Below, piece after piece: positions 45,741-52,637 of a DNA stretch of 64,000 bases. The stretch spans positions 186,001-250,000 of IMG/VR virus record IMGVR_UViG_3300046665_000548; one strand, written 5' to 3'. The notes below the pieces were generated by a model. That model worked only from the letters and a program-made list of their open reading frames with translations. It had not been told where the DNA came from and did no database searches. The stretch's first letter is position 1. Every line of letters begins with the position of its first letter. Both the position numbers and the translations under genes were made by a program.

Positions 45741-45776
45741 AAAGAAAAACCCCGGTCAGATTTCTCTGCCGGGGCT
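45741..45776 (-). terminator. Attenuator terminator upstream of the tRNA array
   Basis: AGCCCCGG-CAGA-GAAA-TCTG-A-CCGGGGT followed by TTTTCTTT. Confidence 0.9.
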
Positions 45777-45800
45777 CTTCTGCTTTCGGGTTCTGCTCGC

Positions 45801-45887
45801 TTACACCACCAAGATGCGCGCGACCAGCCCGAGGGCAGAAAGCCCCCTGGTGGGATAGCACGGCATTGGGTAAAGAGCGTTGAACAT
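45801..45887 (-). CDS. Attenuator leader peptide MFNALYPMPCYPTRGLSALGLVARILVV (not in ORF track)
   Basis: GAGGAAG RBS; codons 5-12 match the downstream tRNAs; codons 14-20 can pair with the terminator 5' arm. Confidence 0.8.
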   Translation of the reverse strand: MFNALYPMPCYPTRGLSALGLVARILVV

Positions 45888-45931
45888 CGAATTCTTCCTC
45901 TGACGCGTCCGGTTGGACCGTCTGACAGTTT

Positions 45932-45939
45932 TATTTATA
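45932..45939 (-). promoter_or_regulatory. T4-type late promoter TATAAATA driving the leader and tRNA array
   Basis: Exact T4 late consensus 45 nt upstream of the leader ATG. Confidence 0.75.
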
Positions 45940-45969
45940 TAACCAGACTGATTCGAGTGTCAACAACTT

Positions 45970-51368: not shown

Positions 51369-51414
51369 ATTCTCCATTCAGTTGCAATTTTGTGTTTTCG
51401 TGGTATTTTTAGGC

Positions 51415-51780
51415 ATGGAACCTGACGAGGAAGATGGCAAAGGATTGGCCCTGCAAGTCATAGCGGGTCGTGATTCAATCTCCATCCACGCGTCTGCTTA
51501 TGAATCCAACTTTTGGCTTCCGCATCAAGATGACTCAGCTTGGTCGATGGTTCTGTGCCCGGTCGGTAACATTCCAGGCCATTATCGAGTAGAGCCTGAC
51601 GACGCATATATCGAACTCGACGGCCATCCTCGTTATCTTCACGCGTCTCGATGCATCGCTCGTCTCCAGGTTCAATTTCCGAGGCTAACTCGCCGCTTTG
51701 ACGGAGAGAACAGGCTCTACATCGAAATCCACAACGAAGACCTTCTCCACTTTCGAATGTTTTGGGAGATGATCGACTAG
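51415..51780 (+). CDS. Hypothetical protein, distant member of the C-terminal FxxxW family
   Basis: Ends EDLLHFRMFWEMID. Confidence 0.55.
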   Translation: MEPDEEDGKGLALQVIAGRDSISIHASAYESNFWLPHQDDSAWSMVLCPVGNIPGHYRVEPDDAYIELDGHPRYLHASRCIARLQVQFPRLTRRFDGENRLYIEIHNEDLLHFRMFWEMID

Positions 51781-51824
51781 CGGTTGGTAATCACGTTGTC
51801 TTGGAACATATTGGTTCCTTTTAT

Positions 51825-51900
51825 TGGTACCAGTTGGGAGAATCGAACTCACCGTATTCCGATCCACAGTCGGACGCTACTACCATTGAGCTAAACTGGC
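51825..51900 (-). tRNA. tRNA-His(GTG), alphaproteobacterial type (no G-1, G1:U72, A73)
   Basis: GCCAGTT/AACTGGT-A-CCA; TCCGA-CTGTGGA-TCGGA; T at position -1. Confidence 0.92.
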
Positions 51901-51911
51901 ATATGTATGTG

Positions 51912-51987
51912 TGGGGTGACTAACGGGTACCGCCCCCGCTTAAACCGCTTCACAGGCGGTCCTCTGATCTTACCGAGTCTAGTCACC
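51912..51987 (-). tRNA. tRNA-His(GTG), canonical G-1:C73 type, with atypical D and T loops
   Basis: G-GTGACTA/TAGTCAC-C-CCA; ACCGC-CTGTGAA-GCGGT; T loop GGCGGTA. Confidence 0.8.
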
Positions 51988-51988
51988 A

Positions 51989-52022
51989 TAGAAAAAGCCC
52001 CCGATCTTGCGACCGAGGGCTT
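51989..52022 (-). terminator. Attenuator terminator upstream of the tRNA-His pair
   Basis: AAGCCCTCGGTC-GCAA-GATCGGGGGCTT followed by TTTCT. Confidence 0.9.
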
Positions 52023-52049
52023 CGAAAACTCAACCGATGAAGACGCGCG

Positions 52050-52130
52050 TTATCGCATCACGGTTGGCCGAAGCCCCGAGGTATGATGCGAATGCTGGTG
52101 CGAGAAGTTCTTCATGATGGGGTATTTATA
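52050..52130 (-). promoter_or_regulatory. Late promoter plus His-rich leader peptide MKNFSHQHSHHTSGLRPTVMR
   Basis: TATAAATA at 52123-52130, ATG 52115; in frame with the tail of ORF 52050-52637; antiterminator pairing with the terminator arm. Confidence 0.8.
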
Positions 52131-52637
52131 CTTGTGGTTTGTGTCATCGTCAAGTTGTTTTTCCAATATGAAGGAATGGGTGGTTTCCTTCAGCAGTTCA
52201 GCCACGCCATTTGCGGCCGAAACCATCTCAGCGTGTCGGTCGCCGGGGATTTTCCCCTCCAAACTATTCGCGGTGCCGTGCAACCAGGATAGCGCGGTTG
52301 GATAATTGATGTCGAAATTCGGAGCCATTTTCTCGTCAATTCCCTCGTCGGAAATCTGAGCGAGCGGATAGATGCTCCTGATCATGTATGAGGCGATGTA
52401 TTCGAACAGCCACCACTGAATATCACCCCTGGGATGCTTCCATTCAAGCTTCCTCGGAGAGATGCGCCAAAACCAAAAAGTTTCGTCTTCTGGCGTCAGA
52501 ACGCTGATCCCGTTGTCGCCGTAAAGCTCGATGCGCAAGCAACCATCGAACCGTGATGCGTTGACCTCACGCAGTTTTTCCACGCACAGATTGAGATCGA
52601 TGTTTTTCTTGAAGGAAACGAATGCGCAATTACCCAT
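52050..52637 (-). CDS. Hypothetical protein whose last 21 codons double as the His leader
   Basis: ORF track. Confidence 0.6.
   Translation of the reverse strand: MGNCAFVSFKKNIDLNLCVEKLREVNASRFDGCLRIELYGDNGISVLTPEDETFWFWRISPRKLEWKHPRGDIQWWLFEYIASYMIRSIYPLAQISDEGIDEKMAPNFDINYPTALSWLHGTANSLEGKIPGDRHAEMVSAANGVAELLKETTHSFILEKQLDDDTNHKYKYPIMKNFSHQHSHHTSGLRPTVMR

What the first reader, a model, noticed from the sequence alone, without database searches (positions are those of the whole stretch)
51825..52130. Second, independent attenuator: His-rich leader controlling two tRNA-His genes
Seen: TATAAATA (52123-52130) is followed 7 nt later by a leaderless ATG encoding MKNFSHQHSHHTSGLRPTVMR, with His codons at positions 6, 8, 10 and 11. 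Next come a 12-bp GCAA-capped terminator with U tract (51989-52022) and, within a few nt, two tRNA-His(GTG) genes. The codons just after the His run (52079-52056) pair with 52039-52017 (GGGCTTCGG/TCGAAGCCC, CAACC/GGTTG, GATG/CATC), which includes the terminator 5' arm. The promoter and leader are hidden in the last 27 codons of an unrelated ORF, so standard annotation would miss them. The same logic appearing twice, with unrelated sequence and a different cognate tRNA, argues strongly against coincidence.
Basis: partly seen in the sequence, partly recalled or inferred. Interest (0 to 1): 0.93.

Follow-up and report, generated by a model that had tools for sequence, protein, structure and literature searches.

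The report
His-codon attenuator before phage tRNA-His
A giant phage puts a tiny histidine-rich reading frame and a terminator hairpin in front of its own histidine tRNA genes, apparently so that the tRNA is transcribed only when ribosomes run short of it; related giant phages carry at least a dozen such codon-matched switches, and my literature searches found no earlier description of this use of attenuation.

Summary
One detail fails. Only 51900-51825 is a bona fide tRNA-His. 51987-51912 is a tRNA-His-like cloverleaf with a non-canonical T loop that ARAGORN and Rfam reject.

The attenuator reading is supported:
- The antiterminator (52082-52012) folds at -33.7 kcal/mol (z -4.56), encloses the stop codon and sequesters the terminator's 5' arm.
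- No other promoter lies before the tRNAs.
- Two homologues of the overlapping ORF end about 30 residues earlier, lack the His tail and have no tRNA-His downstream.

Related megaphage contigs carry the same architecture upstream of tRNA clusters. Each has a promoter, a short ORF whose codon run mirrors the tRNAs downstream, a stop codon 21-31 nt before a terminator, and in most a long-range antiterminator. Each leader matches its own cluster best in 9 of 9 cases (0 of 100,000 permutations).

The mechanism is classical leader-peptide attenuation. The targets (tRNA genes), the phage setting and the multi-amino-acid matching appear new. Nothing has been tested experimentally.

The parts
52148..52153 (-). 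-35 hexamer TTGACG of the cassette promoter
   Evidence: Read. It lies 17 nt upstream of TATAAATA. The same TTGAC(A/G/C)-17/18-(T)ATAAATA arrangement precedes the leaders in window 45963-45932, L020, L024, L005 and L007. Protein homology of the overlapping ORF to its relatives ends about here.
52123..52130 (-). TATAAATA, the -10 region of the promoter
   Evidence: 3 copies in 64 kb, all on the minus strand and all upstream of tRNA genes (33179, 45939, 52130). The simple sigma-70 scan does not list it, because TATAAA lacks the T at hexamer position 6.
52050..52115 (-). Leader reading frame, 21 codons plus TAA (MKNFSHQHSHHTSGLRPTVMR), in frame with and forming the end of ORF 52637-52050
   Evidence: There is no Shine-Dalgarno sequence. 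The ATG lies 7 nt after TATAAATA, as in L020 (ATAAATAC-NN-CATCATG in both). Its N-terminus resembles the other leaders (MFNF.., MFNAL.., MFTNL.., MNFGS..).
52083..52100 (-). Regulatory codon run CAC CAG CAT TCG CAT CAT (H Q H S H H)
   Evidence: one of 5 windows with at least 4 His in 6 codons in the whole window in six frames. Both His codons are read by the GUG anticodon of the tRNA downstream.
52053..52091 (-). Hairpin 1:2 (UCGCAUCA pairs with UGAUGCGA), containing the last two His codons. It forms when the leader is not translated.
   Evidence: -17.0 kcal/mol. It is present in the minimum-energy fold of the whole leader together with the terminator.
52012..52082 (-). Antiterminator 2:3. 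GGGGCUUCG GC CAACCG (52077-52061) pairs with CGGUUG..GU..CGAAGCCCU (52036-52016). An inner hairpin has the stop codon in its loop.
   Evidence: -33.7 kcal/mol, z -4.56, 0 of 200 shuffles; p about 0.001. It overlaps 52023-52016 of the terminator's 5' arm.
51990..52023 (-). Intrinsic terminator: 13-bp stem (two G-U pairs), GCAA loop, U tract UUUUUCU
   Evidence: -22.4 kcal/mol. The stem starts 29 nt after the stop codon, within the 21-31 nt range of all 15 leaders. The tool scan missed it, probably because stem extension consumed the first U residues.
51912..51987 (-). tRNA-His-like element: G-1:C73, anticodon GUG (51953-51951), encoded CCA, T stem GCGGG/CCCGU, but T loop GGCGGUA and no U8
   Evidence: It folds as a cloverleaf. 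Rfam does not find it at E<=10 and ARAGORN does not call it at relaxed settings. Its T stem and anticodon loop are identical to the canonical-type phage tRNA-His of L010 and L028.
51825..51900 (-). tRNA-His(GUG), alphaproteobacterial identity type: no G-1 (U at -1), G1:U72, A73
   Evidence: No promoter-like site lies between the terminator and this gene.
52050..52637 (-). ORF of 195 aa, no Pfam or PHROG family. Its last ~30-35 codons are encoded by the promoter and leader of the cassette.
   Evidence: Homologues P0002 and P0003 end at alignment column 161-166.
45742..45963 (-). Sister attenuator in the same window. Promoter TTGACA-18-TATAAATA, SD, leader 45887-45801 (MFNALYPMPCYP...), terminator 45774-45750, then tRNAs Tyr, Pro, Leu, Pro, Met, Cys, Pro, Cys.
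   Evidence: Codons CTT TAC CCA ATG CCG TGC TAT CCC match Leu(gag), Tyr, Pro(tgg), Met, Pro(cgg), Cys, Tyr and Pro(ggg). Antiterminator z -4.39.

Best explanation
This is a ribosome-mediated (leader-peptide) transcription attenuator, built into a megaphage, that gates transcription of the phage's tRNA-His genes according to the supply of His-tRNA(His).

Transcription and translation:
- Transcription starts at the TTGACG-17-TATAAATA promoter inside the end of ORF 52637-52050, and probably also at promoters further upstream.
- A ribosome translates the 21-codon frame. It either initiates at the 5'-proximal AUG (a leaderless or 3-nt-leader mRNA) or arrives in the same frame from the long ORF.

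When charged tRNA-His is scarce:
- The ribosome stalls in the H-Q-H-S-H-H run.
- The segment just downstream (52077-52056) stays free and pairs with 52036-52016 as soon as that is transcribed.
- This antiterminator sequesters the 5' arm of the terminator, and RNA polymerase reads through into the tRNA-His-like element and tRNA-His.

When His-tRNA is plentiful:
- The ribosome runs to the UAA in the loop of the antiterminator and melts it.
- The 13-bp terminator forms and transcription stops 2-4 nt before the first tRNA-like gene.
- Untranslated RNA also terminates, through hairpin 1:2 plus the terminator.

The result would be negative feedback on the phage-supplied tRNA pool.

Shown: all sequence elements, the energetics and their non-randomness, the absence of the tail in homologues, and the recurrence of the architecture with codon-matched leaders in related phages.

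Inferred: the transcription start, leaderless initiation, the stalling positions, and His-dependence of readthrough.
For: Anatomy and energetics.
- Terminator -22.4 kcal/mol; antiterminator -33.7 kcal/mol, z -4.56; hairpin 1:2 -17.0 kcal/mol.
- With a ribosome placed at the stop codon, the terminator refolds.

His run: rare in the window and absent from 13 other tRNA-His upstream regions.

Promoter:
- The motif occurs only upstream of tRNA genes in the window and is shared by leaders in other loci.
- No other promoter lies before the tRNAs, so the tRNA can only be expressed by readthrough of this terminator.

Homologues of the overlapping ORF lack the tail and have no tRNA-His downstream.

Class evidence:
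- Codon-matched leaders plus terminators lie upstream of tRNA clusters in L004, L005, L007, L020, L024, L027, L053/L061, L065, L084, L088 and L095, and at window 45963-45742.
- The stop codon lies 21-31 nt before the terminator in all 15.
- A long-range helix runs from just after the codon run to the terminator arm, with z at or below -3 in 8 leaders.
- Selection by structure alone recovers 12 loci, 11 of them codon-matched.
- Each leader's own cluster is its best match in 9 of 9 leaders; 0 of 100,000 permutations reach the observed sum.
- 27 tRNA clusters of phage Phosso, used as a negative control, show nothing comparable.

Background:
- Leaderless mRNAs are common and efficiently translated in alphaproteobacteria (PMC4117421).
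- Ribosome-dependent attenuation operates in Sinorhizobium (abstract of PMC6614838).
Against: - There is a single sequence and no homologous copy of this His leader, so there is no covariation for its helices.
- The leader has no Shine-Dalgarno sequence and the transcription start is unknown.
- TATAAA lacks the conserved T at -7, and the simple promoter scan did not list the site.
- The run is short and interrupted: 4 His in 6 codons, against 7 in the enterobacterial hisL.
- A ribosome stalled at His10 or His11 would cover the first bases of region 2, so only stalls at His6 or His8 leave the antiterminator fully free. This rests on my footprint assumption of about 12 nt 3' of the A site.
- The first downstream 'tRNA' looks degenerate.
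- In several other leaders (L007, L027, L005, L088) the automated antiterminator test was not significant.
- The phage is uncultured and there are no expression data.
Confidence: 0.75

Rival explanations
1. Coincidence. The His-rich stretch is just the C-terminal tail of ORF 52637-52050, and the hairpin is that gene's ordinary terminator. The tRNAs are made by constitutive leak-through or from an unrecognised promoter.
For: The 'leader' is in frame with, and is the end of, a 195-aa ORF. It has no SD. The promoter is not listed by the consensus scan. 4-of-6 His windows occur about 5 times per 64 kb in six frames, and the background test alone gives only p of about 0.005-0.02.
Against: Homologues lack the tail. 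The antiterminator has z -4.56 and overlaps the terminator arm. The promoter-to-ATG geometry is identical in L020. The stop-to-terminator spacing and overall architecture match a dozen codon-matched leaders. Three of three TATAAATA motifs lie upstream of tRNAs.
Confidence: 0.08
2. It is a real cis-regulatory leader, but the signal or output differs from His-specific termination control. It might be a general sensor of translation-transcription coupling or of ribosome availability, a control of processing or stability of the tRNA precursor, or a source of a peptide or attenuator RNA that acts in trans.
For: Leaders share N-termini (MF N/V/T ...) and some share C-terminal motifs (DDTK in L065, L084 and L095), which could reflect peptide function. 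Terminated attenuator RNAs and leader peptides act in trans in Sinorhizobium (abstracts of PMC6614838 and PMC7298713). The antiterminator was not significant in some leaders.
Against: Codon content tracks the downstream tRNA set at isoacceptor level. For example, CCA, CCG and CCC pair with Pro(tgg), Pro(cgg) and Pro(ggg). A general sensor has no need for this. The DDTK codons coincide with a covarying hairpin (TACC..GGTA against CACC..GGTG).
Confidence: 0.1
3. It is a decaying relic. The cassette was once a Ser/His leader, as in L005, and is no longer functional, like the degenerate tRNA-like gene next to it.
For: The His leader is unique to this contig. Its TCG Ser codons have no cognate tRNA downstream, and it scores 6 of 8 against the Ser+His clusters of L004 and L005. 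The first tRNA has a broken T loop.
Against: Promoter, start codon, open frame, stop position, antiterminator and terminator are all intact and energetically strong. The second tRNA-His is intact.
Confidence: 0.05

Closest known systems
his operon leader (hisL) attenuator of enterobacteria; Rfam His_leader
   Same: A short ORF with a run of His codons, followed by mutually exclusive antiterminator and terminator hairpins. Ribosome stalling at His codons is the sensor (established knowledge; general model in PMC1183508, abstract seen).
   Different: There is no sequence or structure homology: Rfam gives only tRNA at gathering thresholds and no leader family at E<=10 over 51780-52160. It has 4 interrupted His codons rather than 7 consecutive. 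It is probably leaderless and is embedded in the end of another ORF. It controls tRNA-His genes rather than histidine biosynthesis. It is encoded by a phage.
trpL attenuator of Sinorhizobium meliloti and other amino-acid operon leaders (trpL, pheL, leuL, thrL, ilvL)
   Same: The same three-hairpin logic. It shows that the mechanism works in the likely host class, the alphaproteobacteria (abstract of PMC6614838).
   Different: Those leaders regulate biosynthetic enzymes for one amino acid (thrL and ilvL for two or three related ones). The phage leaders regulate tRNA genes. In sister loci they combine up to five unrelated amino acids chosen to mirror the tRNA cluster.
pheM leader of the E. coli pheST operon (attenuation of an aminoacyl-tRNA synthetase operon; from my own knowledge, not checked here)
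   Same: Leader-peptide attenuation applied to a component of the translation apparatus for the same amino acid.
   Different: The target there is a synthetase, not the tRNA itself. It is bacterial and senses a single amino acid.
T-box riboswitches
   Same: A cis-acting leader with a terminator/antiterminator switch that reports on the state of a specific tRNA.
   Different: A T-box binds uncharged tRNA directly, without a ribosome. Here there is no T-box match in Rfam, no specifier loop, and a translated codon run instead.

Membership tests
Ribosome-mediated (leader-peptide) transcription attenuators | Short translated ORF containing a cluster of regulatory codons | tested here: met
   A 21-codon frame with 4 His codons among codons 6-11. 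Translation itself has not been shown.
Ribosome-mediated (leader-peptide) transcription attenuators | Intrinsic terminator between the leader ORF and the regulated genes, with no promoter in between | tested here: met
   A 13-bp stem plus U tract at 52023-51990, -22.4 kcal/mol. No promoter-like site lies downstream of it before the tRNAs.
Ribosome-mediated (leader-peptide) transcription attenuators | Antiterminator helix mutually exclusive with the terminator | tested here: met
   52077-52061 pairs with 52036-52016 and overlaps the terminator's 5' arm: -33.7 kcal/mol, z -4.56, p about 0.001. This is a single sequence, so there is no covariation.
Ribosome-mediated (leader-peptide) transcription attenuators | Geometry: a stall at the regulatory codons frees the antiterminator, and a ribosome at the stop codon disrupts it | tested here: inconclusive
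   The stop codon lies in the inner loop of the antiterminator. Folds with the ribosome-covered stretch removed behave as expected. However, stalls at His10 or His11 would cover the start of region 2. The ribosome footprint is an assumption.
Ribosome-mediated (leader-peptide) transcription attenuators | Readthrough responds to the supply of the cognate aminoacyl-tRNA | not testable with these tools
   This needs a reporter assay, an in vitro assay, or transcript end mapping.
Rfam His_leader (enterobacterial hisL RNA) | Match to the covariance model | tested here: not met
   No hit at the gathering threshold in the window and none at E<=10 in 51780-52160.
T-box riboswitch | Match to the T-box covariance model, with specifier loop and T-box sequence | tested here: not met
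   No hit.
tRNA (for 51987-51912) | Match to the tRNA covariance model or ARAGORN; canonical T loop and U8 | tested here: not met
   Rfam tRNA gives nothing at E<=10. ARAGORN at -ps40 does not call it. The T loop is GGCGGUA. The cloverleaf, G-1:C73, GUG anticodon and CCA are present.
tRNA (for 51900-51825) | Match to the tRNA covariance model or ARAGORN | tested here: met
   Rfam at 53.3 bits. ARAGORN calls tRNA-His(gtg).
Codon-matched leaders upstream of megaphage tRNA clusters (class defined here) | TTGAC-N17/18-ATAAATA-type promoter; short ORF whose codon run matches the downstream tRNAs; stop codon 21-31 nt before an intrinsic terminator; helix from just after the run to the terminator arm | tested here: met
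   For this element: promoter; run matched to tRNA-His, with its own cluster the best match; spacing 29 nt; helix z about -4.1.

The most novel reading that the evidence does not exclude
Megaphages run their imported tRNA repertoire under demand control.

Each tRNA cluster would be gated by a programmable leader peptide whose codons list the tRNAs behind it. The phage would then switch a cluster on only when those particular aminoacyl-tRNAs become limiting. Possible causes are codon-usage mismatch, host shut-off, or host tRNA-cleaving defences.

In this locus the His attenuator would be one of two His-tRNA sensors. The other is a conserved RF2-like +1 frameshift at a His codon in the adjacent mini-HisRS gene. 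Together with a second, canonical-type tRNA-His, they would form a small His-decoding regulon.
Probability: 0.5. Interest if true: 0.92.

Novelty: new variant of a known kind. Interest (0 to 1): 0.86.

Why it matters
Leader-peptide attenuation has been a textbook mechanism for amino-acid biosynthetic operons for about 50 years. Applying it to the tRNA genes themselves closes the shortest possible feedback loop, because the sensor reads the product.

My full-text searches found no description of attenuation applied to tRNA genes.

- How huge phages regulate their large tRNA arsenals, which is an open question.
- Annotation. Any leader-controlled tRNA cluster gets a sequence-readable label, namely the codons in the leader. 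Some 'hypothetical' short ORFs and odd C-terminal tails would be explained.
- Synthetic biology. The leaders would be a natural set of compact, orthogonal sensors for individual aminoacyl-tRNA pools.

It also makes testable the idea that phage tRNAs are deployed in response to tRNA depletion during infection.

Tried and rejected
- Exact-pattern scans of IMG/VR for the promoter-plus-leaderless-ATG motif. The long pattern found only the window's own contig. The 15-base pattern gave more than 100 unrelated, chance-level hits. A scan for the conserved Ser/Tyr/Cys leader core found only the contigs already held.
- A first antiterminator test that used only the 55 nt before each terminator. It was misleading because the 5' strand of the helix starts right after the codon run. 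Redoing it from 6 nt after the run revealed the long-range helices.
- Phage Phosso, the only cultured relative. Its tRNA-His has a plain promoter with no leader. None of 27 tRNA clusters in 100 kb of its genome has a matched leader. It is a useful negative control, but it means no cultured model is available.
- The known RNA families His_leader and T-box gave no match.
- Relaxed ARAGORN settings did not rescue the first tRNA-like gene.
- Pfam and PHROGs gave nothing for ORF 52637-52050.
- The third TATAAATA site (33179). Its short frame has a single UUA codon and no terminator, so I treat it as a plain tRNA promoter and not an attenuator.
- L008/L026 'MYMQQQQQ...' upstream of tRNA-Gln. The ORF is 52 codons long and its antiterminator is not significant, so I left it as uncertain.

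Full report
**Source and layout**

The window is part of IMG/VR contig IMGVR_UViG_3300046665_000548, 607,744 bp. The nearest cultured relative is the 469-kb Sinorhizobium phage Phosso. Everything in the finding lies on the minus strand. In 5'-to-3' order:
- ORF 52637-52050, 195 aa, with no Pfam or PHROG family.
- Inside its last 35 codons, TTGACG (52153-52148), a 17-nt spacer, and TATAAATA (52130-52123).
- Seven nt later, an ATG (52115) in frame with the ORF. It encodes MKNFSHQHSHHTSGLRPTVMR and ends at TAA 52052-52050.
- A 13-bp hairpin with a GCAA loop and a U tract (52023-51990).
- A tRNA-His-like element (51987-51912).
- tRNA-His(GUG) (51900-51825).
- About 450 nt further on, a 185-aa histidyl-tRNA-synthetase-like gene.

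**Observation check**

- The terminator folds at -22.4 kcal/mol.
- The proposed antiterminator is the minimum-energy fold of 52082-52011, at -33.7 kcal/mol. This gives z -4.56, and 0 of 200 dinucleotide shuffles fold as well. Shuffling only the upstream strand gives p of about 0.001.
- A third hairpin (52091-52053, -17.0 kcal/mol) contains the last two His codons. It coexists with the terminator in the fold of the untranslated leader.
- Windows with at least 4 His codons in 6 occur 5 times in the 64 kb over six frames.
- None of 13 other tRNA-His upstream regions in related loci has even 3 of 6.
- TATAAATA occurs three times in the window, each time on the minus strand within 260 nt upstream of tRNA genes. 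Such regions make up about 1% of the strand-positions.

One correction concerns the first 'tRNA-His'.
- It has a G-1:C73 acceptor end, a GUG anticodon and an encoded CCA, and it folds as a cloverleaf.
- It lacks U8, and its T loop is GGCGGUA where its closest relatives have UUCGAAC on an identical T stem.
- Rfam's tRNA model does not report it at E<=10, and ARAGORN does not call it at relaxed thresholds.

**The overlapping ORF**

A search of 5.8 billion proteins found only two homologues, of 161 and 165 aa.
- They align with 68% and 66% identity up to about residue 160 and then stop.
- They lack the stretch encoded by the promoter and the leader.
- Neither has a tRNA-His downstream.
- Homology therefore ends where the -35 hexamer begins. 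The promoter-leader-terminator-tRNA cassette abuts the ORF and has replaced its native end.

**Comparative evidence**

I used the mini-HisRS as a handle and fetched 16 IMG/VR loci and 80 metagenome loci. I then scanned every tRNA cluster. Upstream of many clusters is a short ORF whose codon run lists the tRNAs that follow, and then one or two intrinsic terminators:

| Locus | Codon run in leader | tRNAs downstream |
|---|---|---|
| L004 | SSHSYCYSSSYHS | Ser, Ser, Ser, Cys, Tyr, Tyr, His |
| L007, L024, L027 | variants of the L004 run | similar Ser/Tyr/Cys/His clusters |
| L005 | SSSSHCSSSHS | Ser, His, Ser, Ser |
| L020 | LLQQLQL | Gln, Gln, Leu, Leu, Leu, Gln, Gln |
| L065 | HDHDWHDD | Asp, Trp, His |
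| L095 | RHDRRMHDD | an Asp/Met/Arg/His cluster |
| L084 | RHDRHMDD | Arg, His, Arg, His, Met, Arg |
| L053, L061 | LPLPLHHLPLYP | a His/Pro/Tyr/Leu cluster |
| L088 | VCHCVAVVV | Val, Val, Cys |
| window 45887-45801 | LYPMPCYP | see below |

In the window's other leader, the codons CTT, TAC, CCA, ATG, CCG, TGC, TAT and CCC correspond one-to-one to Leu(gag), Tyr, Pro(tgg), Met, Pro(cgg), Cys, Tyr and Pro(ggg).

Statistics for the class:
- I selected candidates by structure alone: an ATG ORF of 10-45 codons whose stop lies 15-35 nt before a terminator, within 450 nt upstream of a tRNA cluster. Among 125 clusters this returns 12 loci, and 11 of them are codon-matched.
- For nine independent leaders, each one's own cluster is its best match. 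No permutation out of 100,000 reaches the observed matched score.
- Twenty-seven tRNA clusters of Phosso show nothing comparable.

**Shared architecture**

- In all 15 leaders examined, the terminator stem starts 21-31 nt after the stop codon. The His leader's spacing is 29 nt.
- I folded each leader from 6 nt after the codon run to the end of the terminator's 5' arm. In most, a long-range helix joins the G-rich segment just after the run to the terminator arm and encloses the stop codon. It has z at or below -3 in window_His, window 45887, L024, L020, L095, L084, L053 and L061.
- In L095, L084 and L065 the helices differ in sequence but are equivalent. GGUAGGG pairs with CCCUGCC in L095 and L084, and GGUGG with CCACC in L065.
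- L007, L027, L005 and L088 were not significant in the automated test. By eye, L007 and L027 have a GAGC-AA-GGGUG / CACCC-G-GCUC helix that starts inside the run.
- The promoters are alike, of the form TTGAC(A/G/C)-17/18-(T)ATAAATA.
- Most leaders have a 40-50-nt 5' UTR with an SD.
- L020 shares the His leader's geometry exactly: TTGACG-17-GATAAATA-CGTCATC-ATG, against TTGACG-17-TATAAATA-CCCCATC-ATG. L020 is the contig that also carries an ORF195 homologue.
- That geometry places the transcript start at or within 3 nt of the AUG.
- Leaderless mRNAs are frequent and well translated in alphaproteobacteria (PMC4117421).
- The intact tRNA-His has the alphaproteobacterial identity set: no G-1, G1:U72 and A73 (PMC3875453). 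This points to such a host.

**Mechanism**

The evidence supports classical three-hairpin attenuation.
- A stall at the His codons leaves region 2 free to capture the terminator's 5' arm, giving readthrough.
- Unimpeded translation to the UAA inside the antiterminator loop lets the terminator form.
- No other promoter lies between the terminator and the tRNAs. A constitutive terminator at this position would therefore silence this tRNA-His gene.
- The frame is shared with ORF195, so ribosomes finishing that ORF on longer transcripts would sense the same codons. Leaderless initiation is likely but not essential.

Weak points:
- There is a single sequence, so no covariation is available.
- The transcription start is unknown.
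- The run is short.
- Stalls at His10 or His11 may occlude the start of region 2.
- There are no expression data.

**Comparison with known systems**

It works like the hisL and trpL attenuators. It is not a member of any Rfam leader family and it is not a T-box. Three things are different: the target is tRNA genes, the setting is a phage, and in the sister loci the codon runs combine unrelated amino acids tailored to the tRNA set. Six full-text searches found no precedent. I therefore rate it a new variant of a known kind, with high interest.

**Side observations**

- The mini-HisRS gene appears to need a +1 frameshift at a His codon, and this is conserved in about 17 loci.
- Close relatives carry two tRNA-His identity types. 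The canonical type lies next to the mini-HisRS.

Both fit a locus organised around His-tRNA supply. Details are under 'noticed in passing'.

Noticed in passing
window 51377-50753 (minus strand); shift site CTT CAT at 51287-51282; also L001, L004, L005, L007, L009, L010, L022, L023, L024, L027, L028, L035, L046, L056, L066: The histidyl-tRNA-synthetase-like gene is split between two frames. The frame-0 piece (MLRGTR...LR.CLH) ends at or just after a His codon. The class II core continues in the +1 frame, and in several loci that frame has no start codon of its own. The site is conserved: an SD-like GGAGG, GGGGG or GAGGU, a 3-nt spacer, (C/G)UU, CAY, then a stop or CGA. This looks like the RF2 (prfB) +1 frameshift site with a His codon in place of the stop. 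Full-length protein would then be made mainly when His-tRNA is scarce. Phosso's annotation starts the gene at an internal ATG.
   Followed up: partly
window 51900-51825 and 51987-51912; L004 3000 and 4558; L005 3285 and 2372; L007 3296 and 4594; L024 2208 and 3288; L027 1918 and 3554: These phages carry two tRNA-His identity types. One is an alphaproteobacterial type (no G-1, G1:U72, A/G/U73) inside leader-controlled clusters. The other is a canonical G-1:C73 type, which in L004, L007, L024 and L027 lies directly downstream of the mini-HisRS. The two identity systems are orthogonal in bacteria (PMC3875453). The mini-HisRS, which has a catalytic core only, and the canonical tRNA might therefore form a phage-private pair. 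In the window the canonical-type copy is the one with the degenerate T loop.
   Followed up: partly
window 45963-45742 (minus strand): This is the 'first' attenuator. It consists of TTGACA-18-TATAAATA, an SD, the leader MFNALYPMPCYPTRG..., an antiterminator (z -4.39) and a terminator, followed by eight tRNAs. The eight-codon run matches the cluster at isoacceptor level, including three different Pro codons for three Pro isoacceptors.
   Followed up: yes
window 33179-33117 (minus strand): The third TATAAATA is followed 5 nt later by an ATG and an 11-codon frame (MNSLGHLRLSR) with one UUA codon, and then directly by tRNA-Leu(taa). There is no terminator. It is probably a plain promoter, and the short frame may be chance.
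   Followed up: partly
L024 about 1900-2118: The 346-nt gap between the leader and the first ARAGORN-called tRNA holds two further tRNA-Ser-like genes with anticodon loops containing CGA and GGA. ARAGORN missed them, so tRNA counts in these phages are underestimates.
   Followed up: no
L004 8388-8462; Phosso record 446731-446806 (L213 27232-27307): There are tRNAs with a CUA anticodon, which ARAGORN and the Phosso annotation call 'tRNA-Pyl'. These are amber-suppressor-type tRNAs in this phage group, which hints at UAG readthrough or recoding.
   Followed up: no
window 52103-52077 (minus strand): The three Ser codons in and beside the His run are all TCG. The leader scores 6 of 8 against the Ser+His clusters of L004 and L005. 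The His leader may descend from a Ser/His leader, or it may also sense a tRNA-Ser(cga) encoded outside the window.
   Followed up: no
leaders in window, L005, L020, L027, L084, L088, L095: The leader peptides start alike (MFN, MFV, MFT, MNF, MKNF). The codon run begins at codon 4-7. L065, L084 and L095 share DDTK after the run, and those codons coincide with a covarying hairpin.
   Followed up: no
window 51803-51818 (plus strand) and ORF 51382-51780 (plus strand): A 132-aa ORF on the opposite strand converges on the 3' end of tRNA-His. Between them lies the hairpin GGAAC-N6-GUUCC, which has a U tract only on the plus strand. This ORF separates the tRNA-His unit from the mini-HisRS gene, unlike in Phosso.
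   Followed up: no
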